From positions 1-64,000 of the forward strand of contig NIVC01001542.1 in NCBI GenBank assembly GCA_002269645.1: 64,000 nt of DNA, written 5' to 3'. Made by a program: the position numbers and the translations under genes. Positions 3,523 to 56,909 of this stretch are shown here, one piece after another (the stretch's first letter is position 1; each line of letters starts with the position of its first letter). The DNA is from Macrostomum lignano (taxonomy: Eukaryota). The notes below the pieces were generated by a model, which did no database searches, was not told the DNA's origin, and worked only from the letters and a program-made list of their open reading frames with translations.

Positions 3523-5447
3523 TACTTCTCAGTAGTATATACTGTATGCACTTCCTTCTACATCACTTCACTTAGAAAATGAATCAACATGGAAAAACAC
3601 TTCTTAAAATATTTCATCAGAACTCTCAAGAGATTTCTCAACTAACCATTAAGGTTGAAGGCTGATTCGAAGCTTGAATAAGAAAGCATGCTTCTTCTTA
3701 CCACAAATTCGTGTCTATTTATACTACAATTTCAGTTCATTTAAAACAAAAAATAAATTGCAAAAATTTATTTTGAGAAATACAATTATTAAAACAAAAT
3801 ATTTTTTAGAAACATACAGATTTTAAAATGGCAAAGAAAGTTTGTTTTTTGCATACAAGTAAAGAATAAAACTACCTTCCATATATGCCTTTAGGCTTTA
3901 TGGCTGGGCCTATGTTTTTAAGTGCAACAATACTAAACTTTTGGACATCTTAAACTTTAGGTAGCTAAAATAGTTGCAGTTTTGACAAGATCATAATTTT
4001 GTCTCTATAGGGGTTTTTGGCGGTGCTAGCCTAATTTCAAATTTGAGCTTCATGAATCATTTTTTGTAGCCTAAAGCCAACTATCAGGGCATGGGGAATA
4101 GGGGGTTTTAGGATGGGAAAAATTTTCATGGGGAATAATTTTATATACCTAAACTTCAATAGAGGCATTAAGGTCTATTGATAGGTAGATAAATTTGGAG
4201 ACTGAGAGAAAGAGGCAACTCTTAGGGGATAGGGGGGGTGTTAACAACCATAAACAAAAATGACAAATTGCTCAACATTTGTTAGAACTTAACCCTTTCA
4301 TATATGCACAACCCCCTGATTTACACTAGGCCTCCCCTAGCCATGCAAGTTACTTTTTAACCAAAAATGCAACTTACCTGTGAAAGAAACCTTAAAGCAA
4401 AAATAATGCAATCTTGGGTAAATGGCAAGAGTAATGACTAACTATCTTATAAAGGCTAAAGGCCTTATTATCTAATTAAGACATACTATGTCCATATTCT
4501 TTAAGGTGGGCATTTTTGTGACTTACCCCTAGTCTATTACAATTAATAATGGCCAAATTGGCTAGGTTGGCCAGCAGTTGCATATTTATGCTTTCATAAT
4601 TACCTTACTGAGCATAACAAAATCATTTAGAAAATTTAAATTAACCTATATTTTATTTTTTGTCCCCCTATTTTTTAATAAAAGTATAAAAAATTATCTA
4701 ATCTTGTTTCAATTTTTAAAAAGAAATTTTGGATTTCTTGGTAAAAAATATGAAGATCTTATCTCAAATTTTTCTTGTCAAGATCTTGTGATTTATGAAA
4801 TCTATGCAAATTAGAATAATTAAACTGAATTTAATCAATTTAAAGTTTTTTTCAATAAAAAAATATAGAAAACATTTGACATTTTAGGACTTACTATAAG
4901 TCCAGGGTATTTTCTAATGAACATATCAATTGATTGTTTATTAGCATCTAGTAAATCTTATAGAATATAAAGTTTTTTTAAATAAATAGATCAATAGATG
5001 CTTCTACCTGGGAGAAGTTAATTGAAATAAGGAATTACCAGTGGCAAAGGCAAAAGTGGGGCATTTGGCTATAATTGGTTGGTAGGATGGCAGGTTAGGG
5101 TAGGTTAGCCTTTATAAACGGGCTATTAGCCTATGCCTGAGAGTATTGAACTGATGGCACCCTAAAGTATATTATGTCTTAAGAGAGATGATATATTTAC
5201 TCTTTAGAATGACAATAAATATACATCTTTTTAAATATATTATTAATTAAGAATTAAAACTTTATGTAGTATATATTTTGCTTTGTTTTGAAAATATACC
5301 TCTCACATACCTCTTGCACATATTAGGCTTTCATTTATATACCAAAGATATCTGAGGTTTATCATAGTCAATTTAATGACTTATGCCCAAATTTATATTA
5401 TGTATGTCTGCTTTTTGAATGATTTTTTTTCAGCCACTGTGAAGAGC

Positions 5448-6305
5448 ATGTATGGTCAGGGCCATTCAAATTATCCACATTCATATGGTATGCCAAGCCA
5501 AGCACCTAGCTACCCTATGGCTCATCCATCTCAGTCTCAACAGCCACCACCATATGGCTTATATGCACCGCCTTTGCCAAGTTTTGCTGCTGGCAATATG
5601 CCTGACCAGATGCCAATGCCTTTGTGTCAGCCAGGACAGCCACCTTACCAGCCAGGCCAGCCACCTTACCAGCCAGGCCAGGCACCCTACCAGCCAGGCC
5701 AGCCACCTTACCAGCCAGGCCAGCCACCTTACCAGCCAGGCCAGCCACCTTACCAGCCAGGCCAGCCACCCTACCAGCCAGGCCAACCACCTTACCAGCC
5801 AGGCCAGCCACCCTACCAGCCAGGCCAGCCACCTTACCAGCCAGGACAGCCACCTCACCAGCCACCCTACCAGCCAGGACAGCCACCTCACCAGTCAGGC
5901 CAGCCACCTTACCAGTCGGGCCAACCACCTCACCAGCCAGGCCAACCGCCTTGTCAGTCAGTGTCACAGCCCTACCAGCCAGGACTGCAATCTTATTCAC
6001 CGGGTTCCCAGCCTTACCAGCCAGCATCCCAGCCATACCAGCCGGGACAATCGTCGCAGTCACCATATCAACAAAGCCAGTTCTCAGCCAGTAGTCACAA
6101 TAAAAGGCTCGCGGATCATGCACAGCCAGCGGCATCGAAAGCCTCGTCTGTTGAACCTTCCGCGCCGCCGCCGCCTCCTTCGCCGCCGCTGCCAACGCCG
6201 CAGTCTGCCGCCCAGCCAGCTTCTACAGGCTCGGGCAACAATACAGGCAAAGAGGCCGCTTTAGACGCCTTGGCCCAGATGATGCAAGGCGATGTCAATC
6301 TTTGA
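5448..6305 (+). CDS. Pro/Gln/Tyr-rich low-complexity protein with YQPGQPP heptad repeats (~285 aa)
   Basis: GC-rich ORF inside AT-rich flanks; acceptor-like tttttttcag at 5433 just before ATG 5448; 21-bp repeats encode YQPGQPP; non-repetitive N- and C-termini stay open in frame. No recognisable globular domain. Confidence 0.65.
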   Translation: MYGQGHSNYPHSYGMPSQAPSYPMAHPSQSQQPPPYGLYAPPLPSFAAGNMPDQMPMPLCQPGQPPYQPGQPPYQPGQAPYQPGQPPYQPGQPPYQPGQPPYQPGQPPYQPGQPPYQPGQPPYQPGQPPYQPGQPPHQPPYQPGQPPHQSGQPPYQSGQPPHQPGQPPCQSVSQPYQPGLQSYSPGSQPYQPASQPYQPGQSSQSPYQQSQFSASSHNKRLADHAQPAASKASSVEPSAPPPPPSPPLPTPQSAAQPASTGSGNNTGKEAALDALAQMMQGDVNL

Positions 6306-9553: not shown

Positions 9554-12500
9554 GCCGAATCGAGCTCCGATCGTTTGGCCGCCTTCCAACAGGAAGTGGA
9601 GGCTCTGGTGCGATTCAAAGACGAATACTTTGCCCAGCAACAGGAGCAGCAGCAACGGGGCGGTCGTTCAGCGGCAGTTGAGGCTCGGGTTGAGCAGATC
9701 GCCTCCCGATACGCCGATGTCGGCGCCTCAATCAGCGGCCCGGACAGTCGCTGCGCCCACGCCCTGTCTATGGGCAAACTCTACCACTGCTTGGAGGAAT
9801 TCGACCAGCGAGCCTTGGACAATTTGACTACGGCCGCGAAACTGAAGCCGGACCAGCCGGAGGCCTGGCGCTTGCTCGGCGAAACCTACTGGAAACGGCG
9901 GGACTATCAGTCCGCTTATAACTGCTTCAACAGCGCATTGCAGCACGGCAGGGATAGCGCTGTGCTGCGCAATCTGTCCATGGTGCTGCGAGCTCTGCCG
10001 TTTGCCAGTGCGGCAGATCGGCTGGCTAAGGTTGAGGAGAGTCTGGCCAAGGCTAAGGAGGCCCTGCAGATGGATATTAAGGTGAGGCGCGAGATTCTGT
10101 AACTCCTGTCTGGGCTGTGTGCACCCTGTCACATTGTCACCACAACCGGCGAGAGGCACACATAGCGTGGGGATCAAGGACTACTTAGGACGGGAAAATA
10201 CGTTTCTCGGAAAACTTTAAGAGGCAGGCTTTTCAGAAAGGCAAGACATCGAAAGATGAACTCTGGGTCTGCCACCTTTAAAAAGCAATAACCATTTTTT
10301 GTGCTGAAAATGAAAGCCTTCTATCTTCGTTATCCTTGGCAGTCGTACGCACAGGCTCACATTTACACAGGAGTGTACAGGGGCCCTGACTTTATTTATC
10401 GTTAGGCATGTACACTTCACTTGTGCTTTGGGGGTTGGACCTCGAGGGCGCTAATTATTTAGCCCCAAATGAATGCCACTGCACTTGGAATCGAGCCTGG
10501 GCCGCTGGCTCATCATTGGCTATACGGCTCCCCTTGTAGGTAAAAAAAGGTAAATCTGTAGGTTGGTAAGAATAAGAACCGGATAACAGGTGAATTATAT
10601 AACAGCCCTCTGTCTCACTCACTCGAAACAATTTCCCTGAAATGAGTTACCTCTGAAACAGCAAGGGGTTTGTCTACGTATCGTGCCTTTGATAGTAGTA
10701 TATTCTGCATCTATAGATTTGATTAAATTCTCATTTAATAAATCTACTTGCAATGCCGCAGGACGGGCGCAGCTGGGCGGTGCTTGGCAACGCCTACCTG
10801 AGCTGCTACTTCACCAAGGACCAGTCCAGCACCTCCATGCGCTTGGCCATGTCCGCCTACAGCAACGCTATGAAGGACCCGGTGGCCAGCAGCGACCCGG
10901 ATCTGCACTACAACTCTGCCATGGCGCACGTCTACCTGGATCAGTACGAGCAGGCGCTCAGCGGATTTCGGATGGCCCACAGGCTTGACCCTAGTTGGCC
11001 GCAGGCTCAGGTAATCTCGGATGCGGCAGTGTTGAGATGCTGGGAATAAAAAACATTTCGGAAATAATTGGAAGTGGAAGTAATTGATTGCACCTGCCCT
11101 ACTCGGCCAGATGTGCAACCGGCAGCTCAGCCGCAGCTATTGCGCGGCGCATCCAAGGACGGGGGGGGGTCGTCACACACACCCTCAATTACCCGGCACA
11201 GCTAATGCTGGCACCCATTTTACAACTGGGTGAACTGAAGCAATGCCGTGTTTAAGTGTCGGCAGTGGGTCGGGATTCGAACCCCTGACCTTTCAGTCTT
11301 AATTCGGCACTGTAACCACAAGGCTACACCCCTAATTAATTAGTCTTTAATTCAAAGATTATGGAATAAGAAAAGAATGCCTTTGATGAGGCTATAGGAT
11401 TCTGAAGATCTCAGAAGATCTGTAAGTCGGTATGATGCTGTGTAGTGATGAGGCTGGTGCTATTTGATAAAAACTGGCTCTTATCCTGCAGGAGAAAGTC
11501 ACCCAGCTGCCTCGCATGCTGAGTAGCATCCAGGACATCATCGACAGTCGCGGCCGTTTGAAGCCTCGCGTCTATAAATCCATGATGGAAGGCTTCGCCC
11601 AGCGCCGGGTCAAGGATCTCGGCCCCTACGCTGGTGGCGGCTACTCTGACAGCCGAGGCGAGAGCGTCGCCCTCGCCGAGGTTCGTCTGAGCCAGCTAAA
11701 AGTGGGAGCCAACCCTGAGACTGTGCTGCTGCTGCGAGTGATCGGGCTGCCCCGAGCTGATGACCAGGTAGGTACTTCCGGCGGCTGCTTTTACTCGGTT
11801 TCTTTCGCACTTCCGGTTTTTACTTTAAGTAGCAAATTTATAATTTAGGTTGGTGTTAGAAGTAACAATGTTACACTTCCGGGTTGTATATTTCAGTAGC
11901 TAATTGATACTTCCGGGTTGTATATTTCAGTAGCTAATTGATACTTCCGGGTTGTATATTTCAGTAGCTAATTGATACTTCCGGGTTGTATATTTAAGTA
12001 GTTATTTAATACTTCCGGTTGGTATATTTTAGTAGTTAATTAATACTTCCGGTTGGTATATTTCAGTAGTTAATTAATACTTCCGGTTGGTATATTTCAG
12101 TAGTTAATTAATACTTCCGGTTGGTATATTTTAGTAGTTAATTAATACTTCCGGTTGGTATATTTCAGTAGCTAATTAATACTTCCGGTTGGTATATTTA
12201 AGTAGTTAATTAATACTTCCGGTTGGTATATTTTAGTAGTTAATTAATACTTCCGGTTGGTATATTTCAGTAGTTAATTAATACTTCCGGTTGGTATATT
12301 TTAGTAGTTAATTAATACTTCCGGTTGGTATATTTTAGTAGTTAATTAATACTTCCGGGTTGTATATTTAAGTAGTTATTTAATACTTCCGGTTGGTATA
12401 TTTTAGTAGTTAATAATACTTCCGGTTGGTATATTTCAGTAGTTAATTAATACTTCCGGTTGGTATATTTCAGTAGTTAATTAATACTTCCGGTTGGTAT

Positions 12501-13801
12501 ATTTTAGTAGTTAATTAATACTTCCGGTTGGTATATTTTAGTAGTTAATTAATACTTCCGGTTGGTATATTTCAGTAGCTAATTAATACTTCCGGTTGGT
12601 ATATTTTAGTAGTTAATTAATACTTCCGGTTGGTATATTTCAGTAGCTAATTAATACTTCCGGTTGGTATATTTAAGTAGTTAATTAATACTTCCGGTTG
12701 GTATATTTTAGTAGTTAATTATTACTTCCGGTTGGTATATTTCAGTAGTTAATTAATACTTCCGGTTGGTATATTTTAGTAGTTAATTAATACTTCCGGT
12801 TGGTATATTTTAGTAGTTAATTAATACTTCCGGGTTGTATATTTAAGTAGTTATTTAATACTTCCGGTTGGTATATTTTAGTAGTTAATTAATACTTCCG
12901 GTTGGTATATTTCAGTAGTTAATTAATACTTCCGGTTGGTATATTTCAGTAGTTAATTAATACTTCCGGTTGGTATATTTTAGTAGTTAATTAATACTTC
13001 CGGTTGGTATATTTTAGTAGTTAATTAATACTTCCGGTTGGTATATTTCAGTAGCTAATTAATACTTCCGGTTGGTATATTTCAGTAGTTAATTAATACT
13101 TCCGGTTGGTATATTTCAGTAGTTAATTAATACTTCCGGTTGGTATATTTTAGTAGCTAATTAATACTTCCGGTTGGTATATTTCAGTAGCTAATTAATA
13201 CTTCCGGTTGGTATATTTCAGTAGTTAATTAATACTTCCGGTTGGTATATTTCAGTAGTTAATTAATACTTCCGGTTGGTATATTTTAGTAGTTAATTAA
13301 TACTTCCGGTTGGTATATTTCAGTAGTTAATTAATACTTCCGGTTGGTATATTTCAGTAGTTAATTAATACTTCCGGTTGGTATATTTCAGTAGTTAATT
13401 AATACTTTAGGTCGGTATATTCAACTAGTTAGTTGATAATTCGATAGCAGAAAACGTTTACAAAATTTTCGACCGTGTTTTGTTAAAATTTAAACTTTCA
13501 ACCGCTCCATTAGGTTTGCCTCTCGGTATGCGCAATGGACTCAGACGAAGCCTGCTCACTCGTCAACATATTCAATATCTCGGCGGACCGAGGCCTCACA
13601 GTCGGCGACGCCATGGCGATCCCGGAGCCCACGCTAAGCAGGTTGGATTTCGCTGACAGCGAGACGGGCCGGAAGTTCCAGTTCCCAATAGTGCGGGTGC
13701 CCTCGCCAGACTGCCTGGTGGTGAATGGCAAGAAGGCCAAGGCCAGTGCATGGCGCAGCGCCACCGTGTTCTCATCCCAGGTGTCCAGCTCGTCCACCTG
13801 A
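9554..13801 (+). CDS. TTC5: Tetratricopeptide repeat protein 5 (TTC5/STRAP) orthologue, ~447 aa; exons 9554-10081, 10762-11010, 11492-11767, 13514-13801
   Basis: All introns GT-AG and phase 0. Motifs AAKLKPDQPEAWRLLGETYWKRRD, LRNLSMVLR, QMDIK|DGRSWAVLGNAYLS, DPDLHYN, LDPSWP, GDAMAIPEP and VRVPSPDCLVVNGK match recalled human TTC5 (EAWNQLGEVYWKKGD, QMDVHDGRSWYILGNSYLS, GDSVAIPEP, LVVNGK). The initiator Met lies upstream of the 9553 acceptor. Confidence 0.93.
10146..10530 (-). mobile_element. Interspersed repeat family 2 (probable tRNA-derived SINE) in TTC5 intron 1
   Basis: Shares acacaggagtgtacag, atttatcgttag.catgtacacttcac and tttagccccaaat..atg..actgcacttggaatcgagcctgggcc with 29270-29550; the minus strand has a B-box-like GGCTCGATTCC near its 5' end. 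Confidence 0.6.
11097..11331 (-). mobile_element. tRNA-headed SINE family 1 (CORE-like body) in TTC5 intron 2
   Basis: Minus strand has A-box TAGCCTTGTGG, B-box GGTTCGAATCC, then GCATTGCTTCAGTTCACCCAGTTGTAAAATGGGT; homologous to four other copies in the window. Confidence 0.8.
11872..13410. repeat. 34-bp intronic minisatellite (tacttccggttggtatattttagtagttaattaa), ~45 copies
   Basis: Fills most of TTC5 intron 3; highly homogeneous units. Confidence 0.95.
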
Positions 13802-14944: not shown

Positions 14945-15651
14945 GTTTAGAAATCTACGAAGAAGTTAAACTAAGACATAATTTATAGCTACCTACCATT
15001 TGAAGCAGCCGTCAAATTGACTCTTCTCTTCTACTCGTCCATGTTGACAACCCGTTATTGTAGCCAAATATACCCGGTAGATAATAAATAAAAACCATCT
15101 GGAAGCTTTCAGATCCTCAAAATACTCTCTGAGTATTATTTTAGGTATTACTCCTATTAGTATGTCTTTCATTAGGTAAAATTTATTTGTGTCCTACTAA
15201 TTTTTAAATCAAGGACCACTAGAAGTACATCAATCAGGACGCTGCAGTCAAAGATGGTATAATTTTTGGAGGCTGATTTCCGTAAAAAAATGCACTGCGG
15301 AGATTAGAAAAAATCAACTCTATTTTATATAGTTGTGCAGTGAAAGTTTTGTTTTTACATTTTTTATAAGCCCGAAGTTGTTAATACTCACAAGTTGAAT
15401 TACGAGCGTAGTTACATAAAATACACCAGAGCAACATGCTGTTCATGCTAAATTAAAAGAATGCTAATCTTCACTAATCCAGATCAAATGCAATCATTGA
15501 TTTTGTAATGAGCCTTCAAAAGAATTACACGATCTTTGACTGTAGCGTCCTGATTTACTGCTAGTGGTCCTTGATTCAAATCAGAACTTTACCGAAAGCG
15601 AACCCATCCAACCTGCTCTCTTTACAGAAGACTTGCATTTTTTTGAGAAAC

Positions 15652-16920
15652 ATGGACGGTCAAAGCAGCAATGCGACTTCCGCCGGTACAGGACAACTCG
15701 AAGCGGCGTCAACTTTGAGTGAACGTCAGCGAGACCAGATCCAGCATATTAGTCGGTATAGAGATGTGCTTCTTCTAAGACTTGAATCCATGCAGATAAA
15801 CCAGGCTGGCCAGCCGCTCAGTCTTCGGCATTTAAGCAACGTAGTTGACTGGCCAGAGTATTACGTTCGAGTCCAGACTGGCTCTAGTAAAGTAGACGAG
15901 TTGATTGCAGATTTAGATACGTTTTTCGGCGCCAGTCTGGCTCAGCTGAATCAGGTGCGCGATGAGGCCAGACAGAAGCTGGCAAGATTTTTTCCGAGCT
16001 CAGTGGAAGCGGAGCAGCTTGAGTTGCGCATGTTCCAGCGTCTAAGATCTTGTCAGGAGGCCAACGAGTCGAATTTCGAAGAAATCTATCAATTTGCAAT
16101 GGTCGCTCTGTGCTCATTTCTGCACTGGCTGCAGCCGTCGCCTTGGGAGCGTCGGCAGCAACTTAGCAAACGAATGCACTGGCTTCACGAGCAGTACCAG
16201 GACACCATCAAGCAGCGCATTGACGCAGAGTATCGAAGTAATCCTTTCTATGCTCAGACGCTTCAGAGGTTGTGCCTTGTGTTGAAAGCGCCGGATTCTT
16301 TCTTGGAGAAGCGCTCATACTCCGAGGGCATTGTCGGACCGGTTGATCGTCTGGAAGCGTTTCTGCAAAACTTCTCCAATCAGACGGCTGAGCAGCGCCT
16401 TAAAGACCAGCTGATCTGTCGGATGCGGATTTTCCATCGGCAGCACGGAGATTACATCAGAAAGCGCATGGAAACTAGCAGTATTAGCCCGGTCGTCTTG
16501 GACAAGCTTCGTAAAATGCTCGCCGACTTTGAATCACCCGAGTCATTTTTCCTGCATTATAAAGACGATTTGGAAGCCATGCAAAAATTGCTGGATCGAT
16601 CCGAGTCCACTCTTGAAGCCGTATTGCCGGACAAATTGCATCCGAGCTTGCGCAAAGTCCGCACAGAGGCTCGCGCGAAATTGGCGCAATTGTATCGGAG
16701 TCCCGCACTTGGTGACTACTATGTAGACCTGCTGCTGAAGCTGTACCCGAAACCAGAGAAGCTGGAGACTCACCTGTACAACCGGTGTCGAAGGGTTACA
16801 TCGGACAGTGCCGAGCTGGTTTTATACGAGCGATACATAAAGAATCTACTGATTGTGCTCAACGGTCGCTGGCATGAGAGCCTGTTAAGACCGTTTCTAA
16901 TCGAAGAACGCGAGCTTTAG
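15652..16920 (+). CDS. MED15-derived shuffled protein (middle-domain/KIX/middle/middle/KIX), ~422 aa, single coding exon
   Basis: 449-codon ORF with ATG at 15652 after acceptor ctctttacag. Segments LSERQRDQIQHI, ERRQQLSKRMHWLHEQY and EQRLKDQLICRMRIFHRQH resemble NERQQVQVQRMRQLHQQH of the 26203 gene; RTEARAKLAQLYRSPALG matches the KIX repeat RVETRRKLANLYRSPAPG. Confidence 0.8.
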   Translation: MDGQSSNATSAGTGQLEAASTLSERQRDQIQHISRYRDVLLLRLESMQINQAGQPLSLRHLSNVVDWPEYYVRVQTGSSKVDELIADLDTFFGASLAQLNQVRDEARQKLARFFPSSVEAEQLELRMFQRLRSCQEANESNFEEIYQFAMVALCSFLHWLQPSPWERRQQLSKRMHWLHEQYQDTIKQRIDAEYRSNPFYAQTLQRLCLVLKAPDSFLEKRSYSEGIVGPVDRLEAFLQNFSNQTAEQRLKDQLICRMRIFHRQHGDYIRKRMETSSISPVVLDKLRKMLADFESPESFFLHYKDDLEAMQKLLDRSESTLEAVLPDKLHPSLRKVRTEARAKLAQLYRSPALGDYYVDLLLKLYPKPEKLETHLYNRCRRVTSDSAELVLYERYIKNLLIVLNGRWHESLLRPFLIEEREL

Positions 16921-19250: not shown

Positions 19251-20170
19251 GTTATTCTTTTACGCCTAAAAACCATTAAAATGGCACGACTCAGCTCATT
19301 GGTTTTATGATTATATTTTATCATATTAGCTGACTGTGTAACAGAGATGATAAAATAGATTCAAAAAACCAAAGGTTCAAGCTGTGCCATGCATTTTTAA
19401 TGACTTTTAGATACAGGAAATGCACGTAAAATCGAAAAACTATTTAGAATCCTAATTTTCTGAGAGAAAGCTTTATAAATATCAATAGAGCTATAACAAA
19501 GGCACAACATATCAAAATATAAACATTGGGTCTGCCTCCTATCGAAAGCAAAAAAAAATTTGTGTTCAAAAATAAAGACTTCCTTTTTTCGTAGGGTATT
19601 TTTCGGTGAACAGTGGCCTTCAAAACGTTTTTAATAGATTTCGAGTGTTGCGTCCTTCTACTTTAGTATGGTCTACTTAACATGGTTGTTGCAGTCTCAC
19701 GCAGAAACTGCGCGAGTTCAAACCCAATTGCGTCATTCCAAAGAAGCCTCTATGTTCCTTTCGCTCCTCGACACTCAAAATATAGATTTTTTGGACTAAA
19801 CTTGTACACACGAAGCCTTGAATGCCCTAGATATGTGCAAGTTTAGTCTATAAAAATCTATGAGAATTATTTTGAGTTTCGCTTCCTGATGAGCTAAAGG
19901 CTTCCTTAGCTTGCTTTTCAAGTTTTCGTTAATATAAGTCCAATTTTCGTAACTTTTTTGTCAAACCCTGCTTGCTAGTGTCATTGTGAGCAGAATGACA
20001 CATCATTTGTGTACATAGGTTACTCGGGCTCCACTTTATGAGCTCAAGTTGACAGGCCCTTTGGTTAAAGTAGTTCAGAAGCTGGATCCATTTATGCTAA
20101 TTCATATCGAAAGTTATCAAATTAAGTTTAAAAACCATCTTCATGCGCTACCGCGGCTTCAGAGAGTAAA

Positions 20171-21249
20171 ATGGATAACCAAAACCGTGCCCTACGATAC
20201 GTCATTGTGCCGCCACCGCAGCAGCTGCGTGCTGAGACTCGATGCAAGCTGGCTAATCTGTACCGCAGCCCTGCACCTGGAAACCAGGTAGCTCAGCTGC
20301 TGGACCGCTATCCACCGCTGAACAACTTGAAGATTCCATTTTCAGGCATTGTCAGGCTCAGCAGCGGAGTGGTGGCGTCAGCTTTGATCAGCACCAGTAC
20401 CTGAGCCTTGTGTCCAAGGTGGAAGACGCGCTGACGGGTCGCCTGTCGCATCAGCGACAGCAGCTGCGTGCTGAGACACGACGCAAATTGGCTAATCTGT
20501 ACCGCAGCCCCGCACAGGGACACCATGTAACCGAGCTGCTGAACCGCTGTCCCACCGCTGAACAGCTAGAAGATTGCCTTTTCAGGTATTGTCATTCTCG
20601 CCAACAAAATGGTGGTGTCAGCTTTGATAAGCAGAAGTACCTGCACGCTGTGTCCACTATGGAAGGCGTACTGACCGGTCGCCTGCCGCTTAAGCCACAA
20701 CAGCTGCAGCAGATGCGTGTTGAGACTCGGCGCAAATTTGCTAATCTGTACCGCAGCCCTGCACCTGGAAATCTGGTAGCCGATCTGCTGAGACAATATC
20801 CTACTGTTGAGCAGCTGGAGGATTTGGCTTTCAGGCGTAGTCAGGTGCAACAGCAGAGAAGTCGCGCCAGCTTTGATCAGCAGTACCTGAGCATTGTGTC
20901 CAAGCTGGAAGACTTACTGACAGGTCGCCTGCCGCCGGCGCAAGAGCAAAAGCTGGAGCAGATGCTGCAGCAACAGCAGCAGCGGGAGCAGCAGCTGCGT
21001 GTTGAGACTCGACGCAAGCTGGCTAATCTGTACCGCAGCCCTACACCTGGAAACCTGGTAGCCCAGCTGCTGAGCCGCTATCCCACCGCTGAACAACTTG
21101 AAGATTTCGTTTTCAGGCGTAGTCAGGCGCACCAGCGGAGTGGTGGCGCCAGCTTTGACCAGCAGTACCTGAGCCTTGTGTCCAACCTGGAAGGCATACT
21201 GACGGGTCGCATGCTAAGCCTGCTTCCATTCGATGAACGCGAGATTTAA
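20171..21249 (+). CDS. Tetra-KIX protein derived from the MED15 N-terminus (~359 aa if one missing C at ~20312 is restored); possible pseudogene or assembly error
   Basis: Four ~75-aa repeats QQLR.ETRRKLANLYRSP.PG...YPT.EQLED..FR......SFDQQYLS.VS.LE..LTGR. Repeat 1 reads tatccaccgct where repeats 3-4 and the 26203 gene read tatcc[ct]ac; adding one C joins ORFs 20171-20404 and 20410-21249. Confidence 0.8.
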
Positions 21250-21359
21250 TATCGCATCTAGTTCGTGCCACATGTAACTAATTGTTTGTCCGATATATAA
21301 GCATTATTTAGTGTAATAATAAGTAATAATTTACTACAACTGGCCTAATAGGAAAACCC

Positions 21360-22240: not shown

Positions 22241-23319
22241 ACAGGAAAACACTACGAGACTGACTTGAAGCCAAAAGCTACGTTATAATTCTCGACTCTT
22301 ATTTTCGTTACCTCTTATACTTTTACGTTGACCATACACAATATTTCTATGGCTAACTGTGCCAGAATCATTTGAAGCGTGCATTCTTCACTTTGGTTGG
22401 TAAAGTTGACTTTTAGCGACACAAATGGACACCTAATGCCAAACGAGCGTAAATCAAGAACAGCTGGCAACAGACCTCGGCAATCACACTAAGAGAGCCA
22501 ACCAGCTAGGGTTCCTCACTGCCGCAAAATCTATAGGCAGTAGCACAAACACGTGCTGGACTATTGACACCCCTGTACTGACTCACTGGGGCGGAGCGGG
22601 GGTAGTGTGGAAAGGCGCGGTTGGAGGATTTCAGCTGCGGGGTAAGAGCCAACAAATGAGCCTTGGTTTTAAAAATGCAATAAAATGCTTCTGTTTAACT
22701 TACTACTGAACTGAAAGTAGCTTACACGCAAATGTGCTGAGTGGCTCATCTAGTTATTCTAGTATCTGGGTTTTTTGTCAGTTGAATGCACGCTTTATTT
22801 GATTCTGGCACAATTATTGCCGGATGGTTAATGTTTTGTCTATGGGCTTGCCAATGTCCAACAAGCATCATAGCTGAGACGCTGACATTCCAGCGTTACT
22901 CCACAGCCCACAGATGGTTGCGAGTAGGCAAGAGCTGTCAGCCTTGCTACATTAAGCAAACGTATCTCGGATTAAATTCAAGGCGCTTAAGCACAAATAG
23001 GCTGCAAAAAGCTATATTAAATACTTAATTATTTATAGGGTACAAGCTGTTGAAACCCGCGGATTTTGAACCCGGGGAATTTCAATCCCTGGAACTATTT
23101 TTGCATGTACTCGTATTCTAAAATCTGAGGTCAAACTCAAACAAAAACTCGTTAATATATAGTTAGGTTAGAATTAAACATAAAATAGAGTACATTTGTG
23201 AAAAATTAGGATTTGAGGCAAACATTTATATTGTTGGCTGGGGTGCTGCGAACAGGCAAACTCTGGCCTCTGCCTCTCCTTATGTCCCTTGGATTCTTAG
23301 AAACTTCGACCTTCTCTTC

Positions 23320-23621
23320 TGTTTCCTCTCCTCTCTCTTGTCTCTGTCTCTTCTCTCTCTCTCTCTCTCTCTCTTCTATCCCCTATTCTCTCGTCTATTC
23401 TCTCTTCCTTCTATTTTTTTATCCCTCCTCTCCTCCCTCCTCTCTACTCTCTCCTCTCTCCTCTCATCTCTTCTCTTCTTTCCTCTCTCCTCTCTCCTCT
23501 CTTCTATTGTCTCTTCCCTCACCTCTCTTCTCTCTTGTCTTTGCTCTCTTATCTATCTCTTCTTTTATCTTTTCTCTCTTCTCTCTTCTCATTCTTTCTG
23601 CATGTTTTCTCCTCTCTCTTT

Positions 23622-23698
<77 letters not shown>

Positions 23699-24416
23699 CT
23701 CTCTGCTCTCTCCTGTCCCATATCTCTTTCTCCTCTAATCTCTCCCCTGTTTCCTCTCCTCTCTCATCCTTTCTCCTCTTTCCCCTGTCCTCTCGGTTTT
23801 CTCTCCTCCCCTCCTCTCTCCTCACTCACTTCTCTCTCCCTTTGTCTCACCTCTCATCTCTTATTTCTATCCTTTTTTTCTTTTCACTCTCCCATCTCTC
23901 GTCTGTTCACTCTCGTCTCTGGTCTCTCATCCCCCTCTCTCATCTGCCATCTTTACTCACTTATACTCGTATGTTTTCTCACCTCTCTTATCTGTACTCT
24001 TCTCTTTCCCCTCTTTTGACTCCTCTCTTTCCTTTCTCCTTTTTCCCTTCTCTTCTCTTCCCTCTTCTATTCTCTCCCTCTCTTGTCTTCTCTCTTCTTT
24101 CTTCACTCTCCTCTCTCCTCTCATATATCGCGTTCACTCTCATCTTTGCTCTCTACCCCCTCTCTCTTCTGTCATCTTTACTCTCCACTCTCCTGTGTAC
24201 TCTTCTCTTTCCCATCTACTGAATCCTCTCTTCTTACTCCTCTTCTCTTCCCTCTTCTATACTCTCTCCCCTCTATTCTCTTCTCTTGTCTCTTTGCACT
24301 CTGCTCTCTCTTCCTTCATCTCTCATCTCTACTCTCTCATCTCCACAATCTCATCTTTCCTCTCTCCTCTTCTTCCCTTTACTCTATCATTTCTCCTTTC
24401 TCCTCTCTTCTTTCTC

Positions 24417-24478
<62 letters not shown>

Positions 24479-24790
24479 TCTTATCTCCTCTCTTCTCACT
24501 CCTCTCTCCCTCTCTCTCCCCTCCTATCTCCTCTCTGTTCTCTATTCTCTATTCTCTTCTCACTCTTCTCTACTCTCCTCTCTCATCGATCCTCTGTCTC
24601 ATCTCTCCCCTCTTCTCTCTTCCTCTTCTCACCTCTACTCTTTCCTCTCCCTCCTGTCTCCCCTCCTCTCGCTTCCTCCTCCCATATTCTCTGCTCTCTC
24701 CTCGTCCTCACCCCACTCGTCTCTCCTGTTATCTTATATTTTTTCTCTTACCCCCCTCTCGCCCTTTCTCTCTTTCTAATAGTCTATTCC
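23320..24790. repeat. CT-rich polypyrimidine low-complexity tract with (CT)n cores
   Basis: Almost purine-free top strand; pure (CT)n at ~23625-23695 and ~24418-24475. Confidence 0.95.
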
Positions 24791-25599
24791 TTTTCTTTTT
24801 CACTCTCATCTGGCCCGCAGCCATGTGCCCATGACTCCATGAGCTGGATTCTTTATCTGGCCTTTGAGTTAAAAATCTACCGATCCCTGCTTCGAAAGCC
24901 AGTTTGTGGGATGTAGTACTATCATGGTTATCATTTCTCATGCTTTAATCACGTCACCTTTCTGGCCAATTAGCAGCCCTGAGAGGAATTTGTGTATCTC
25001 CAGCTCCACCACCACAGTCTGCACTCTGCAGCAGTCTAACAACCAAGGAAATGCGCATTTCTTAGGAGTCATTTAAATTTTAAAGTTACCCTATGCGAAA
25101 CTTTATGTTAAAAGCTTCATGGTGTAACTAATTTAGTAGGTTTGCATTGTAATAAGTTATTCATTAATTTTTCGCTATTTTTACAAACCATCCCGCATCG
25201 CCTTGATTTGCCTGTTTGCCATTCACTGTTAAACTGCTGCAGACTTGTCTATACAGAGGACAGTGGATTGAATCTCTCGCTGAAACTGTCTCTCCTCTCC
25301 ACGCCTCTCCACTCGCGGGGGTGCAGAGAAGGCTATTAAAAGTTATTCCAAAACACTGTACGTTGCCATGTACATTCAGCCCTATCGCCTGACCCTTCGT
25401 CTGGGCTGGGGCAATGAGTGAGTGAGTGGCACAAACAACAGAAAAAGCAGACAAACTTCACATGCTTACAGTTTCCGTCCTGATTGAGATACAGAGTTGA
25501 AACTTTACATTTAGATAGAGAATGAGTCAATGAAGAATTGTGTCAAGTTTAAAGTCAATCGCTTTACGTGGAGCAAACTTATGGCAGCTGAAAGTTAGT

Positions 25600-26062
25600 C
25601 AATTTTGAAACCCTTTTACACATCTGGGCCCAGATCGGTATCGGGAAAGAGAGGCAGGCGGGCGGAGGTTGGGGTGGTTGCTACGCTGAAAAAAACAGCC
25701 TAACTTTAAAAGTGCACAGCGGCTTTCAGGATTAACTTTGAGATTTGAAATTTTACACGATTGTGACAAAATAGTTGAAAATTGCCTGTGTCAAATTTGA
25801 AGAGAATCGGTAGAAGTGGAGCGGCGCTATGGAGGATTTAGTGAAAAAATTGCGCATTTTGAGCAGTTTTTTGCACTTTTAGGTAGGAAGACTTGAGTCT
25901 AGGAAATTAAAAGGTAGCCTAAGACATTCTCCGTAGTAAGTTTAGGGTGGGTGTAAAGTTTGGTGTAATTTGGTTGAGCGGTTTGGGAGTCCATAGCGAT
26001 CAAAATTGTCCACACACAGACAGACACACAGACAGAGTTTTGATTTTTATAGGTAGAGAATA
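25600..26062 (+). mobile_element. Helitron/Helentron-like non-autonomous element (DINE-1/Lep1-like 3' end)
   Basis: caaatttgaagagaatcgg and aagtttggtgtaatttggttgagcggtttgggag followed by an ACAG/ACAC microsatellite and ttttataggtagag, the layout recalled for these elements. Confidence 0.5.
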
Positions 26063-26202
26063 AAATACTTTTGTAAACCTAATTTGTAGTGTTCCGTAAA
26101 CTCAATCTCATTTCATATAAATTCATACCGTAAGCTGTAAAATAAAGTTTTGAAAAATGAAATCACCATCGTTATCTTTCTGAGCTACCGGCTTCAGAAA
26201 AA

Positions 26203-28916
26203 ATGGAGCCGAACCAAAACTATGGCCAACGATACCCCATCATGCAGCAACAACAGCTGCAGCAGCTGCGTGTTGAGACTCGACGCAAGCTGGCTAATCT
26301 GTACCGCAGCCCTGCACCTGGAAACCAGGTAGCCCAGCTGCTAAACCGTTATCCCACCGCTGATCAACTGGAGGATCACGTTTTCAGGCGTTGTCAGGCT
26401 CACCAGCAAGGTGGTGGCGTCAGCTTTGACCAGCAGTACCTGAGCATTGTGTCCAAGCTGGAGGACGCACTGACAGGTCGCCTGCCGCAGCCGCAACAGC
26501 CGCAGCAGATGATGCAGCAGCAGCAGCCGCCGCCTACTCAAGTGATGCAACAGCAATTGCAGCAGCAGCAGCAGCAGATGATGCAACAGCAGCCTCCGCC
26601 GCAACCTCAGCCTCAGGTGATTCGGCCTCAAATGCCGACAGATCCGCTGGTGTCGCTTTCAAACATGGTCGGCGGCGGCCCGGTTGGCGTCAGCAACATC
26701 GTTGTCGGTGGTGCCCGGATGGGGCAGCAGAGTGTGCCGTTGCAGCCTCGCATGGGGACCAGGCCTGTTCCGCAGCAGCAGCAGCAGCCGCCTCCCAACC
26801 AGCTTCCACCATTGAATGAGCGTCAGCAGGTTCAAGTGCAGCGCATGCGGCAGCTCCACCAGCAGCACAGCGAGACGGTCAGAGCCCGGATGGAAAATTC
26901 GCACGGCAATGCGGCCAATTTTGAGAAGCTGCGCCAGATTTGCAACATTCTCGAGACGCCAGAAAATTTTGTACGCAACCAGCGGGATCCGGATAAAATT
27001 GACAACACAATCAGGCAGTTGGAGAGCATTCTGCGGCCCAATGCGCCTCACGCTCAGGCACTGCAGCAGCAGCAGCAGCAGCAGCAGCACATGCTACAAC
27101 AACAGAGACTTCAGCAGCAGCAGCAGCAGCAAATGCAACAGCAGCAACTGCAGCACCAGCAGCTACAGCAGCAGCAACAACTCCAGCAACAGCAGCAGCA
27201 GCAACTGCAACAACAGCAATTGCAGCAGCAGCAATTGCAACAACTGCAGCAGCAACAGCAATTTCAGCAGCAGAAATTGCAACAGCAGCAGATGATGTCG
27301 CAGATGCAGCAACAACAACAGCAGCAGCAGCAATCGCCAATGCCCATGTCCAGTGCAGCTCCTGACAGCGTCGCTGCTTCGTCGCATGACATTCCTCCGG
27401 CGCCTCGTCGACTTGGTGAAACACTTCTTAAAGTACGTTAAAGTACGCCAACCAATCACCTCTTAGTTGACTCTATAAATTCGCTGTCAAGGTTCACCTT
27501 TAATACAAAAGAGTTCGGCCTCCAATACCTTTTTTTAGAGCAAAACATCATCAACTTGGTGTTTTTAAAGCCGTTCCCTATCTGTCCGTTGCCCAACGAT
27601 TCAAAATCACTAACAAGTTTTCTCCAGCCAACGATTGAAAGAAGCAACCAGAATCCATGGAACATTCTGTCACGATAGATTGCATCCGCCGTCAGTTGCG
27701 TCCCCACCGGAGTGGAGAGGGGGGCATGTCCCCCGGCCCCAGTAAAAGCTGTGGGGGGGGGACATGCCAGTGCTTTGTCCCACCCGCCTCACCTTGTAAC
27801 CCGCTACGGAAATCAATCATTTCTCCTTTGGGTGCCAAAATGTAGCGCCTTTGGCGCCAAAAAGAGTGCCTGCGGCGCCAAAATGGGTGTCTGCATGCGG
27901 TGCCAAAATAAGTGCCTGTCTGCGGCGCCAAAATGAGTGCCTGTCTGCAGCGCCAAAATGAGTGCCCGTCTGCGGCGCCGAAATGATTGCTAGAAACACC
28001 GATTCCTAAAAATGTAGGAACTCAGTCATGTAGAATTCTTGGCTTTGTCCCCCTCCCTACTAAGAAGTCCATTGGCGGCGCCCCTGTCTGCCGTCACAAG
28101 TAAAGATTTTTACCAACAAAATCATCTCTTCCACTCCTCCAGGAAATCGAATCTGTTCTCAAAAGTCCCGTCTGCGATTCCGTCTGGTCTCGCTTCGCCT
28201 CTGAGGTCCGTTCGGCGAATCAGGGCATTGTCCCGCCTCGTGACACTCTGTTCATCCCCGTCTCCGTTGACTCGGCAGCTGTTGGCGCCTCCGACGCGCC
28301 GCCGGTGACTCCCGCGCCGGCTCCGGATCAGCCGTTGCGCTCCGAGCTCGCCGACCTGCCGCCCTACTGGCGCGTCCGAGTCCTGACCAGCTCGGCCGGC
28401 CCTGTCGATCCGGACAGCAGCAAAGACGACGCCGCCGACAATCAGGAAGACGAGTCGGTGGATGCTGCCGACGCTTCTAAAGTTGAGGGCAGCGACGCGG
28501 TAACCTCTAGACGGGTTCGTCTGCGCGCCGTCTACACGAACCGGCACTTGATGCCCGACGGCGCCGCGCCGGAGCTGCTGATCACCCTGGCGCCCGGCTA
28601 CCCGACTGTCCGGTCCGCCACCGCGCGACTTCTGCCGCCGCGCCTATCGGCAGCTGATAGCGCCGACAATGGCAGCGACAAGAGCAGCAACTGCAGTCGG
28701 AGCGCCGAGCTGACCGCGGACGCCGCCGAACTGCGCCGGCTGATCCAGACCGAGTGGCGGTCGGCCTACGTGGAGTACAAGCGGGTCTATCGGGACAGGA
28801 ACAGCCTCACGGGAGTGCTGGACGCCTACCACAAAGCCCTGCTAGTGGCCTACGATAGCTGGGCCCCCGGCAGTGAGTTCAGCCTGGCTCAGGTGCGAGC
28901 CTTTATGCGGCGCTGA
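26203..28916 (+). CDS. MED15: Mediator subunit 15 (MED15/ARC105) orthologue, ~667 aa; exons 26203-27432, 28143-28916
   Basis: N-terminal KIX-like LEDHVF...QQYLSIVSKL (human MESHVF...DEYLSLVARL), polyQ tracts, middle domain FEKLRQICNILETP (LSKMKSLLDILTDP). The phase-0 splice gives TLLK|EIESVLKSPVCDSVWSRF (PLLDAVLANIRSPVFNHSLYRTF). C-terminal LRSELADLPPYWRVRV...PELLITLAPGYP...SLTGVLDAY matches LQGEVARLDPKFLVNL...PPLELSVPADYP...SVTALLNTW. Confidence 0.85.
27693..28086. mobile_element. hAT-type MITE in the MED15 intron
   Basis: Imperfect TIR cagttgcgtcccca / tggcggcgcccctg; 8-bp TSD tccgccgt vs tctgccgt; internal ~24-bp repeats gcggcgccaaaatgagtgcctgtct. Confidence 0.7.
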
Positions 28917-43087: not shown

Positions 43088-43440
43088 CCTCGAGGCCGAG
43101 GGCAGGGGCAGCAGTGGATGGTTGTGCTGATGATGATGCTGCTGGTACGTATGCCATTGTGGTGATCCGTCGGTAGCGTGGTGGGGCCTGCAGCGCAGAA
43201 AAGTGCACCGATGCTTCGTCCGACGTGTCCGCCTGTGCTGCTGGGACAAGGCGTTGCCGAGGTGAGCCGCATCGACGTCGCAGCGTCGGGTGGGGCGTTG
43301 CAAGCAAACTTTGGCAGGCGAGAGCCCCTTACCCGGATTGCACTGCTCACCTACTGCATAACCGCAGTGACCAGGAATCAGTCATGGTCACTTTGATGCG
43401 GCTCCAGTCAGAAGCGCTGAGCCGGATGCAGGGATCGAGG

Positions 43441-51200: not shown

Positions 51201-51305
51201 GTTTGGTTCAAGATTTTGCGTCAGATACTTGTATACAGTCCGATTGTCTCCTGCCTTAACTGAAGCAAAGAATATGTCTCTAGCGGCTGTTGGTGCAGCT
51301 GCCAT
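45290..51305 (-). CDS. Giant ankyrin-repeat protein copy 3 (~1772 aa, intact); exons 51305-46345, 46235-46065, 45476-45290
   Basis: 1721-codon ORF, likely ATG at 51305 (MAAAPTAARDIFF); continuous ankyrin repeats; two phase-2 GT-AG introns as in copies 1 and 2. Confidence 0.9.
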
Positions 51306-55128: not shown

Positions 55129-55388
55129 TTAGAGTTGGGTAAAGGTAGATAGATGTACGTACAAGCGTATTTAATCGTGAGCTAAAATAATTTAACTGGA
55201 TGGAGTTATTTGATGTCTATGGAAGTTAAAAATAAAATAGAATTAGCAAGCTTATTTAGCTCAAAAATTATAACAGAGTAAAGAGCCACAGTGCAGTTGC
55301 ACTTCAGGTAATCACACATACGAGTATACCCTGATATACACATGATTTTTGCTTTATGTTCTTCGTACTGACTGCGTCAAAGCAGACC

Positions 55389-56558: not shown

Positions 56559-56590
<32 letters not shown>

Positions 56591-56602
56591 ATGGATGGAT
56601 GA

Positions 56603-56634
<32 letters not shown>

Positions 56635-56876: not shown

Positions 56877-56909
<33 letters not shown>

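What the first reader, a model, noticed from the sequence alone, without database searches (positions are those of the whole stretch)
15652..16920. Intronless M-KIX-M-M-KIX shuffled MED15 derivative
Seen: three segments (~15715, 16147, 16390) resemble the MED15 middle domain of the 26203 gene and two (~15952, 16651) resemble its KIX. The order differs from MED15, polyQ is absent, the repeats are strongly diverged, and the frame is intact over 420 codons. Inference: an older derivative maintained by selection, with a new domain architecture.
Basis: partly seen in the sequence, partly recalled or inferred. Interest (0 to 1): 0.72.

Follow-up and report, generated by a model that had tools for sequence, protein, structure and literature searches.

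The report
Flatworm gene built from shuffled MED15-like domains
A Macrostomum lignano flatworm gene encodes a 422-residue protein made only of five reshuffled copies of the two small helical domains of the neighbouring MED15-like coactivator gene; it has stayed intact in all three genome copies and may act as a free-floating binder of transcription-factor activation domains.

Summary
Window 15652-16920 (+) is an uninterrupted 422-codon ORF, with 0 stops against 11-23 in the other frames. It consists of five diverged helical units in the order M-KIX-M-M-KIX. Each unit is homologous to one of the two folded segments of the gene at 26203 (HH probability 82-97% per unit, 98% for the unit profiles, controls 1.2% or less).

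The window is Macrostomum lignano (assembly Mlig_3_7).

Selection is supported:
- Synonymous sites against the parent units are saturated.
- All three assembly copies keep the ORF.
- The most diverged copy has 9 nonsynonymous and 8 synonymous changes (dN/dS about 0.3).
- That copy has no indel in the ORF, against 10 indels in 1.1 kb of flanks.

A database gene model from NCBI starts exactly at a TTACAG trans-splice-type acceptor 24 nt upstream of the ATG.

What is not established is the label. Neither the parent gene nor the target reaches significance against Pfam, PDB or canonical bilaterian MED15 profiles. Only weak, cognate-specific signals and the parent's KIX-polyQ-M-polyQ-C layout point to MED15.

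No orthologue was found outside this genome.

Best reading: a lineage-specific, selected array of MED15-type activator-binding domains. It lacks the polyQ linkers and the Mediator-anchoring C-terminus, so it probably works off-Mediator, for example as a competitor for activation domains. The function is inferred.

The parts
15622..15627 (+). TTACAG, a putative spliced-leader trans-splice (or cis 3') acceptor, 24 nt upstream of the ATG
   Evidence: It matches the M. lignano trans-splice acceptor motif [T/C]TNCAG (PMC8629364) and is the only such motif in the 120 nt upstream. The NCBI-sourced gene model P0001 begins at 15628, immediately after it. A 1-nt indel at 15638 in the third assembly copy shows that 15628-15651 is untranslated.
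15652..16920 (+). Complete ORF: 422 codons plus TAG, 49.6 kDa, no polyQ
   Evidence: The protein is identical in copy L001 and has 9 amino-acid changes but remains intact in copy L003.
15697..15930 (+). M1 (residues 16-93), the most degenerate M unit
   Evidence: SW z 13.2 and hhalign 85.7% probability against the parent M. tblastn E 3e-6.
15931..16134 (+). K1 (residues 94-161), a KIX-like unit lacking the roughly 14-residue segment between helices 1 and 2
   Evidence: SW z 8.3 and hhalign 82.4% against the parent KIX. The alignment is A1.
16135..16371 (+). M2 (residues 162-240)
   Evidence: SW z 16.7 and hhalign 92.7% against the parent M. z 9.3 against M3.
16372..16629 (+). M3 (residues 241-326)
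   Evidence: SW z 16.9 and hhalign 96.1%. The AlphaFold2 model built with paralogue rows gives three helices (residues 6-34, 40-62 and 67-84 of the construct), with block-mean pLDDT 79-89 across the unit's helices and lower only at the linker to K2.
16630..16917 (+). K2 (residues 327-422), a KIX-like unit plus the C-terminal tail LLRPFLIEEREL
   Evidence: SW z 21.4 and hhalign 97.3% against the parent KIX. The tail, the stop codon and about 25 nt of 3' UTR align with the 3' end of the KIX-array gene at 21160-21275.
20171..21249 (+). Sister derivative: four tandem KIX-like units. In this copy a 1-nt deletion (CCC to CC) near 20305 breaks the first unit.
   Evidence: It is an intact 359-aa ORF in copy L001, annotated in GenBank as PAA59367.1, BOX15_Mlig028310g4. 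Its 5' end and upstream sequence align with those of the 26203 gene.
26203..28916 (+). Parent-type gene, MED15-like by layout. KIX-like at 26245-26496, polyQ, M at 26797-27057, polyQ, an intron, then a C-terminal ORF at 28305-28916.
   Evidence: Annotated products are 668-672 aa in the three copies. Links to canonical MED15 are weak and cognate-specific only.

Best explanation
It is a real, selected, lineage-specific protein-coding gene of Macrostomum lignano.

Origin. It arose by duplication of the first exon of a MED15-like coactivator gene lying 10 kb downstream. The polyQ linkers were lost and the two small helical modules were multiplied and reordered. These modules are a KIX-like bundle and an 'M' three-helix unit, which by position corresponds to the activator-binding domain ABD3 (Pfam Med15 central domain) of MED15. 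The result is M-K-M-M-K. The gene shares its 3' end with a younger sister gene made of four KIX units.

Proposed mechanism (inferred, not shown). [quoted passage not shown] It therefore cannot be built into the Mediator tail. It would bind transcription-factor activation domains off-Mediator, acting as a multivalent competitor, buffer or adaptor that modulates MED15-dependent activation.
For: Shown:
- Homology of all five units to the two parent segments, with clean negative controls.
- Intact ORF and coding-frame signal.
- A star-like pattern in which each M unit is closer to the parent M than to its sister units, and saturated dS with dN 0.55-0.82. Both point to old, independent divergence of the units.
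- Three assembly copies all keep the ORF. L001 differs by 2 changes, both at synonymous third positions. L003 has 9 nonsynonymous and 8 synonymous changes, dN/dS 0.30-0.32 by NG86 and LWL85, and binomial P 0.02. L003 has 0 indels in 1269 nt of ORF against 10 in 1100 nt of flanks, P about 5e-4. By contrast the sister KIX-array gene carries different frameshifts in two of the three copies.
- Expression is indirectly supported. The NCBI-sourced model P0001 starts exactly at the TTACAG acceptor. The annotation of this assembly was built from RNA-seq transcriptional units cut at experimentally mapped trans-splice and poly(A) sites (PMC5730564; motif in PMC8629364).
- The AlphaFold2 model of M3-K2 is all-helical, with mean pLDDT 76.7. 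M3 forms three helices, as does the human MED15 ABD3 solution structure 8J9A, which binds YAP/TAZ activation domains (PMC12022045).

Inferred:
- MED15 identity of the parent. It rests on the KIX-polyQ-M-polyQ-C layout and weak but cognate-specific profile signals. The K family vs the canonical KIX scores 20.8, reached by 0 of 300 column shuffles. The M family vs the canonical central domain scores 17.7, reached by 2 of 300. In both cases the cognate domain is the best of three.
- No Mediator docking. The target has no counterpart of the parent's C-terminal ORF. [quoted passage not shown] Mediator structure 6W1S chain J holds only human-numbering residues about 619-785 of MED15.
Against: - No significant match of the target or the parent to Med15 Pfam families, to MED15 chains in the PDB, or to canonical MED15 profiles. 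HH probabilities are 0.5-13%. The concatenated HMM scores 1.6 bits and is reached by 46 of 2000 shuffles. The C-domain comparison is no better than shuffles.
- Foldseek of the model against the PDB found nothing (best E 5.9), so a KIX or ABD3 fold is not demonstrated.
- No orthologue was found in two very large protein searches.
- There is no canonical AATAAA or ATTAAA within about 900 nt after the stop.
- YN00 gives dN/dS 0.78.
- There is no clear nuclear localisation signal (only RKR at residue 270).
- No binding or expression data were examined directly.
Confidence: 0.5

Rival explanations
1. It is a real, selected gene, but the helical units have been co-opted for something unrelated to activator binding, for example a structural or scaffold role, or a fast-evolving lineage-specific role. 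The MED15 ancestry would then say little about its present function.
For: The units are only 27-42% identical to the parent and less alike among themselves. K1 has lost a segment. No orthologues were found. There is no nuclear localisation signal.
Against: The hydrophobic core pattern and the 'hhxhhxxP(D/E)x(F/Y)' motif of the M unit are kept in all copies. Both domain types were retained and multiplied rather than one degenerating. There is no signal peptide or transmembrane segment at the N-terminus.
Confidence: 0.22
2. The parent at 26203 is not MED15 but a lineage-specific Q-rich protein. The target would then be a shuffled derivative of that protein, and all Mediator-based inference would fall away.
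For: Every direct test against MED15 was non-significant: Pfam, PDB and hhalign at 13% probability or lower, and the C-terminal domain no better than shuffles. Foldseek found nothing.
Against: - The layout is three-helix N-domain, polyQ, three-helix M, polyQ, then a C-domain.
- Profile scores are reciprocal-best and cognate-specific, exceeding 298-300 of 300 column shuffles.
- Motif-level collinear matches occur at the expected places, for example EQLEDHVFRRCQ..QYLSIVSKLE vs EMENHVFQKAKT..EYLSLVARLI, and ELLITLAPGYP vs PPISITVPEDYP.
- Med15 is known to be markedly divergent between phyla (PMC2475620).
Confidence: 0.18
3. It is a non-functional relic: a transcribed or untranscribed decaying duplicate whose open frame is accidental.
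For: No homologues outside the genome were found. The gene is not annotated on two of the three contigs. The sister KIX-array gene is visibly decaying. There is no nearby poly(A) hexamer.
Against: A frame of 422 codons is open although synonymous sites are saturated relative to the parent. The ORF is intact in three copies, with no indels inside it while the flanks have 10 (P about 5e-4), and there is an excess of synonymous changes (P 0.02).
Confidence: 0.06
4. The ORF is only the last exon of a larger gene whose upstream coding exons are cis-spliced to the acceptor at 15627.
For: The reading frame is open from 15571 through the acceptor, and the database model is 5'-partial.
Against: - No convincing + strand coding ORF lies between the TTC5-like gene end (about 13803) and 15627.
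- A 1-nt indel in copy L003 lies between the acceptor and the ATG, which would break any upstream frame.
- The acceptor fits the trans-splice motif.
Confidence: 0.06

Closest known systems
MED15 (ARC105, Gal11, MDT-15), Mediator tail subunit. Pfam PF09606, PF21538 and PF21539.
   Same: It is built from the same two kinds of small helical module as the adjacent MED15-like gene: a KIX-like bundle and the central three-helix unit. In human MED15 the central unit is residues 528-601, called ABD3 (PDB 8J9A), an activation-domain binding site.
   Different: The target has no polyQ or intrinsically disordered linkers and no C-terminal Mediator-association domain. It has five modules in a permuted order, M-K-M-M-K. 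It does not reach any Med15 family threshold.
The neighbouring four-KIX gene (window 20171-21249; GenBank PAA59367.1, BOX15_Mlig028310g4, on the sister contig)
   Same: It derives from the same parent and has the same C-terminal tail, stop codon and start of 3' UTR. It also lacks polyQ and the C-terminal domain.
   Different: It contains KIX units only and is much younger (dS 0.23-0.45, dN/dS 0.53-0.70). It keeps the parent's 5' end. It is frameshifted in two of the three assembly copies.
MED15 paralogue sets in plants and oomycetes
   Same: They are a precedent for duplicated, rapidly diverging Med15 genes (PMC2475620).
   Different: The source describes them as Med15 paralogues that may form alternative Med2-Med3-Med15 triads, not as arrays of activator-binding modules without an anchor. 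Whether each keeps a Mediator-binding region was not checked here.
Stand-alone KIX proteins (plant KIX8/KIX9 adaptors) and the KIX domains of CBP/p300. Recalled from general knowledge, not tested here.
   Same: They show that a KIX module outside Mediator can serve as an adaptor for transcription-factor motifs.
   Different: They are of unrelated origin and have a single KIX. KIX8/9 carry repressor-recruiting motifs. There is no M unit.

Membership tests
MED15 / Med15 (Pfam PF09606, PF21538, PF21539) | An N-terminal KIX domain recognisable by the Med15 or KIX profiles | tested here: not met
   There was no Pfam hit at E up to 10 and no PDB hit with the K-family profile. hhalign of the target K units vs 14 bilaterian MED15 KIX sequences gives 0.5% probability. 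The whole K family gives 13% (P 0.002; 0 of 300 column shuffles reach the score).
MED15 / Med15 | The central domain (PF21538; human ABD3, residues 528-601) | tested here: inconclusive
   There was no Pfam or PDB hit. hhalign of the target M units vs the canonical M profile gives 2.4% probability, P 0.019, reached by 4 of 300 shuffles. The cognate domain is the best of three. The number of helices in the AF2 model agrees with 8J9A, but Foldseek gives no match.
MED15 / Med15 | [quoted passage not shown] | tested here: not met
   The target ends after K2. No segment resembles the parent's C-terminal ORF at 28305-28916 or the canonical C-domain HMM.
MED15 / Med15 | Gln-rich low-complexity linkers | tested here: not met
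   The longest Q run is 2 and Q content is 7%.
Local MED15-like gene family of M. lignano (26203 gene, four-KIX gene, target) | Significant homology of its units to the K and M segments of the 26203 gene | tested here: met
   hhalign gives 82-97% per unit and 98.6% and 97.7% for the unit profiles. SW z is 8-21. Controls are negative.
KIX fold (three-helix bundle binding activation domains) | A three-helix bundle superposable on MED15 or CBP KIX, with a hydrophobic TAD-binding groove | tested here: inconclusive
   The AF2 K2 model is helical, with block-mean pLDDT falling from about 83 to 48 along the unit. It has four to five helices including an inserted one. There was no Foldseek match to any KIX entry. 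Binding is not testable here.
Processed retrogene | Loss of parental introns, a poly(A) remnant and a dispersed location | tested here: not met
   The parent's K and M already lie in one exon. The copy is 10 kb upstream on the same strand in a tandem cluster. No poly(A) tract follows the stop.

The most novel reading that the evidence does not exclude
M. lignano has evolved, from its own MED15, a free multivalent 'activation-domain sponge'. This would be five activator-binding modules without a Mediator anchor, acting as a natural competitor or buffer of MED15-dependent transcription. Together with the younger four-KIX gene it would form a small, lineage-specific system for tuning coactivator access.
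Probability: 0.25. Interest if true: 0.7.

Novelty: new variant of a known kind. Interest (0 to 1): 0.45.

Why it matters
If the reading is right, this is a natural experiment in coactivator design. Evolution has taken only the activator-binding modules of a Mediator tail subunit, discarded the disordered polyQ linkers and the Mediator anchor, and kept the product under selection.

It would give a testable case of endogenous 'squelching' or buffering of activation domains. It would also provide a set of highly diverged KIX and ABD3-type modules for studying how these small bundles recognise activation domains.

It is also a clean example of new-gene birth by exon duplication and domain reshuffling, visible at three ages in one 12-kb cluster: parent, old derivative and young derivative. 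This occurs in a neopolyploid genome whose homeologous copies allow selection to be read directly.

If the MED15 link fails, it remains an orphan helical-repeat gene of modest interest.

Tried and rejected
- Pfam scans of the target, the four-KIX gene and the pieces of the 26203 gene gave only sub-threshold noise and no Med15 family. One scan failed on a frame error.
- The precomputed 'PF26249' on P0002 is a faint 4HB_RdRP3_N hit and is irrelevant. A literature search for it found nothing.
- PDB sequence searches with the single proteins and with the K and M profiles gave no MED15.
- The word-indexed search and the exhaustive 1.84-billion-representative search found only the protein itself and the four-KIX gene. 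A composite query of the parent found only the four-KIX gene.
- hhalign and HMMER against 15 bilaterian MED15 sequences were not significant by standard criteria.
- AlphaFold2 from the single sequence failed, with pLDDT 38.
- Foldseek of the better model (pLDDT 77) against the PDB gave no match.
- A first MAFFT alignment misplaced the last M helix onto the last KIX helix and was discarded.
- The bacterial promoter and terminator scan and the tRNA scan are irrelevant for this eukaryote.
- The poly(A) hexamer search found none within about 900 nt of the stop.
- Literature searches for the scaffold names and for Macrostomum plus MED15 found nothing useful.
- The exact look-up of the upstream 289-aa gene model, meant to read its locus tag, failed. 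The idea that the target is gene 'g3' of transcriptional unit Mlig028310 therefore rests only on counting genes.
- A retrogene origin was rejected (see the membership test).
- Use of the spliced leader's terminal AUG as start codon was rejected, because copy L003 has a 1-nt indel between the acceptor and the ATG.
Full report
**Where the window comes from**

The target protein is carried by contigs of assembly GCA_002269645.1. That accession is cited in papers on the Macrostomum lignano genome, and its NIVC prefix is the annotated M. lignano assembly Mlig_3_7, NIVC01000000 (PMC5730564). The window is the first 64 kb of contig NIVC01001542.1, because locus L002 is 100% identical to window 10398-31249.

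Two further assembly copies of the locus exist:
- NIVC01002272.1 (L001), 98-99.9% identical.
- NIVC01001545.1 (L003), about 96-98% identical.

This fits the known redundancy of the assembly and the recent polyploidy of the species (PMC10733133 listed).

**The observation**

Window 15652-16920 (+) is one open frame of 422 codons plus TAG.
- The other five frames of the same stretch contain 11-23 stops.
- A codon-usage log-odds score trained on other long ORFs of the window is positive only in the proposed frame, +0.14 bits per codon against -0.05 to -0.30.

| Segment | Window position | E-value |
|---|---|---|
| M-like | 15715-15927 | 3e-6 |
| M-like | 16141-16365 | 5e-8 |
| M-like | 16414-16641 | 1e-9 |
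| KIX-like | 15943-16149 | 1e-3 |
| KIX-like | 16648-16791 | 2e-10 |

Smith-Waterman scores against 500 shuffles give z = 13-17 for each M unit vs the parent M. They give z = 8.3 and 21.4 for K1 and K2 vs the parent KIX. Every M-vs-K pair has z of 1.5 or lower.

hhalign gives 82-97% probability for single units. The profiles of the three M units and the two K units reach 98.6% (E 6e-16, 78 columns) and 97.7% (E 2e-12). Cross controls stay at 1.2% or lower.

The longest Q run is 2, against 9 in the parent's first exon.

**Anatomy**

After a 15-residue N-terminal leader come M1 (residues 16-93), K1 (94-161), M2 (162-240), M3 (241-326) and K2 (327-422).
- K1 lacks the roughly 14-residue segment (SPAPGNQVAQLLNRYPT in the parent) between the first two helices.
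- All M units keep R28, L42 and P52 of the parent unit and a 'hhxhhxxP(D/E)x(F/Y)' motif.
- Each M unit is much closer to the parent M than to its sister units. Only M2-M3 reach z 9.3 between themselves. This star-like pattern fits early internal duplications followed by long, fast, independent divergence, with the parent changing little.

A single-sequence AlphaFold2 run failed, with pLDDT 38. A run on residues 241-422, with all window paralogue units as alignment rows (A7), gave mean pLDDT 76.7.
- M3 forms three helices, with block-mean pLDDT 79-89 across them.
- K2 forms helices 91-109, 116-124, 128-142 and 148-163 plus a tail helix.

Foldseek against the PDB found nothing, with a best E of 5.9. 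The folds are therefore helical bundles but are not identified by structure.

**The cluster**

Three related genes lie on the + strand.
1. The gene at 26203-28916 has a KIX-like domain, polyQ, M, polyQ and, after an intron, a C-terminal ORF. Its annotated products are 668-672 aa.
2. The gene at 20171-21249 is four tandem KIX-like units, which TRF sees as a 249-bp repeat. Its start codon, first residues and upstream sequence align with those of the 26203 gene.
3. The target.

The target's C-terminal tail (LLRPFLIEEREL), stop codon and the next 25 nt or so align with the 3' end of the four-KIX gene (LLPFDEREI). The two derivatives therefore share an ancestor that had already gained a new 3' end.

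Nei-Gojobori estimates:

| Comparison | dS | dN or dN/dS |
|---|---|---|
| Four-KIX units vs parent KIX | 0.23-0.39 (up to 0.45 between units) | dN/dS 0.53-0.70 |
| Target units vs parent units | 2 or more, or not computable | dN 0.55-0.82 |

The target is thus the older derivative. Because the parent carries KIX and M in one exon, the uninterrupted ORF says nothing about retroposition. Tandem exon duplication with internal reshuffling is enough to explain it.

**Is it under selection and expressed?**

Copy L001 differs from the window at two positions in the ORF, 16251 and 16848. Both are third-codon positions and the protein is identical.

Copy L003 keeps all 422 codons.
- It carries 17 substitutions, 9 nonsynonymous and 8 synonymous.
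- dN/dS is 0.30-0.32 by NG86 and LWL85, and 0.78 by YN00.
- The excess of synonymous changes has binomial P = 0.02.
- The 1269-nt ORF has no indel, while the 1100 nt of aligned flanks have 10 indel events (P about 5e-4 if placed uniformly).
- One of those indels, at 15638, lies between the upstream acceptor and the ATG. This shows that translation starts at 15652.

The four-KIX gene is an instructive contrast. It is intact only in L001 (359 aa). It carries a 1-nt deletion in the window and a different 22-nt deletion in L003.

For expression I have only indirect evidence.
- The model P0001, whose only listed source is NCBI, starts at 15628, exactly after TTACAG.
- The gene models listed for these contigs match the GenBank annotation. 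The 367-aa model is PAA59367.1, BOX15_Mlig028310g4.
- That annotation was built from RNA-seq transcriptional units cut at experimentally mapped spliced-leader and poly(A) sites, followed by TransDecoder (PMC5730564).
- The M. lignano trans-splice acceptor motif is [T/C]TNCAG (PMC8629364). The target, the four-KIX gene and the parent each have exactly one such motif in the 120 nt before the ATG, 24, 8 and 5 nt upstream respectively.
- No AATAAA or ATTAAA lies within about 900 nt after the stop, so the 3' end is undefined.

**Is the parent MED15?**

This is the weak link. Pfam holds three Med15 families (PF09606, PF21538, PF21539), as seen on true MED15 proteins. No piece of the target, the four-KIX gene or the 26203 gene hits them. 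PDB sequence and profile searches do not reach MED15 chains.

I verified human MED15 528-788 against 7EMF chain O and collected 15 bilaterian MED15 sequences. Results against their domain profiles:

| Query | Canonical profile | hhalign score and probability | Shuffle control |
|---|---|---|---|
| K family | KIX | 20.8; 13%, P 0.002 | reached by 0 of 300 column shuffles |
| M family | central domain | 17.7; 4%, P 0.011 | reached by 2 of 300 |
| Three target M units alone | central domain | 16.5; 2.4%, P 0.019 | reached by 4 of 300 |
| Parent C-terminal ORF | C-domain | 14.6 | reached by 35 of 150 |

- In each of the first three cases the cognate domain scores best of the three canonical domains.
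- The C-terminal comparison aligns at the expected motifs but is not above shuffles.
- A concatenated K+M+C HMM gives 1.6 bits and is reached by 46 of 2000 shuffles.

The MED15 assignment therefore rests on the domain layout plus weak, cognate-specific signals. Med15 is known to be markedly divergent between phyla and between paralogues (PMC2475620), so the failure is not strong negative evidence. I put the assignment at roughly 80%, as an inference.

**What the modules do in MED15**

- Human MED15 528-601, the position corresponding to M, is the three-helix 'ABD3' domain solved as 8J9A. It binds the YAP/TAZ activation domains through a hydrophobic groove on helices 2 and 3 (PMC12022045).
- The KIX domain binds SREBP-1a (PMC5138257).
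- Mediator structure 6W1S holds only the C-terminal region of MED15.

**Mechanism proposed**

The target keeps and multiplies only the activator-binding-type modules. It has neither the disordered Q-rich linkers nor any counterpart of the anchoring C-terminus.

The most economical reading is a soluble, multivalent binder of activation domains that cannot dock on Mediator. It would compete with, buffer or re-route activators that use MED15.

Homology, architecture, age, ORF conservation and a helical fold are shown. The MED15 identity of the parent, nuclear action, activation-domain binding and competition are inferred.

**Rivals**

- A selected gene whose modules were co-opted for another role.
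- A parent that is not MED15.
- A decaying relic. This is made unlikely by the three intact copies, the indel contrast and the saturated dS.
- A terminal exon of a larger gene. This is made unlikely by the UTR indel, the lack of upstream coding ORFs and the acceptor motif.

**Novelty and score**

No orthologue or similar architecture was found in two very large protein searches. No literature on Macrostomum MED15 was found. Med15 paralogues are known in plants and oomycetes, where the source presents them as possible alternative Med2-Med3-Med15 triads rather than anchorless module arrays.

I rate this a new variant of a known kind, with interest 0.45. It is a well-supported case of gene birth by domain reshuffling with a testable and attractive mechanism. 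It is still an orphan with no functional data and an unproven family label.

Noticed in passing
window 20171-21249; L001 16542-17621; L003 9500-10591: The four-KIX gene is intact (359 aa) in only one of the three assembly copies. The window copy has a CCC to CC 1-nt deletion near 20305. L003 has an unrelated 22-nt deletion near the start of unit 1. Either the gene is decaying independently in the homeologues or these are assembly errors.
   Followed up: partly
window 15622-15627, 20157-20162, 26192-26197: All three family members have a single [T/C]TNCAG trans-splice-type acceptor, 24, 8 and 5 nt before their ATG. The GenBank locus tag ending in g4 for the four-KIX gene suggests that several of these genes belong to one annotated transcriptional unit together with the upstream TTC5-like gene. 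That rests on counting genes and was not verified.
   Followed up: partly
window 16560-16630 vs 16840-16880 (and the parent M and KIX ends): MAFFT first aligned the last helix of the M units (..IRQLESILRP, ..VDRLEAFLQN) onto the last helix of the KIX units (..VSKLEDALTGRLP). M and KIX may be distantly related three-helix modules. The pairwise score is not significant (z 1.5).
   Followed up: no
window 23042-26054 and about 19530: There are structural differences between assembly copies. A CT-rich microsatellite block of about 3 kb (TRF 23311-24703) is absent from L001, and L001 has about 2 kb extra at window position 19530 or so.
   Followed up: no
window 11875-13442: A 34-bp tandem repeat of 46 copies at 95% identity lies inside the TTC5-like gene (Pfam TTC5_OB and TPR, product 444 aa), presumably in an intron.
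   Followed up: no
window 31424-36583 (-), 46281-51446 (-), 42617-43303 (-): There are very long ORFs (760, 952 and 1721 aa) that read as ankyrin-type repeat proteins with near-identical C-terminal ends, plus a 228-aa fragment copy. This looks like a locally duplicated family. They were not scanned against Pfam.
   Followed up: no
window 5376-6305 (+): An ORF of 309 aa is dominated by PGQPPYQ heptad repeats. It is annotated as a 289-aa gene on the sister contig.
   Followed up: no
window 54466-55152 (+), 56396-57349 (-), 63081-63600: These are minisatellite-like stretches with extreme GC skew. They read as (E/G)RVKLTE heptads and HPSI repeats in open frames, and there is a 31-bp-period array carrying AATAAA on the minus strand. 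They are probably non-coding repeats.
   Followed up: no
The search for homologous proteins: A composite query made of exact pieces of the 26203 gene did not return that gene's own annotated 668-672-aa products. The word-indexed search evidently misses some Q-rich proteins, so 'no homologue found' from that tool is weaker than it looks.
   Followed up: no
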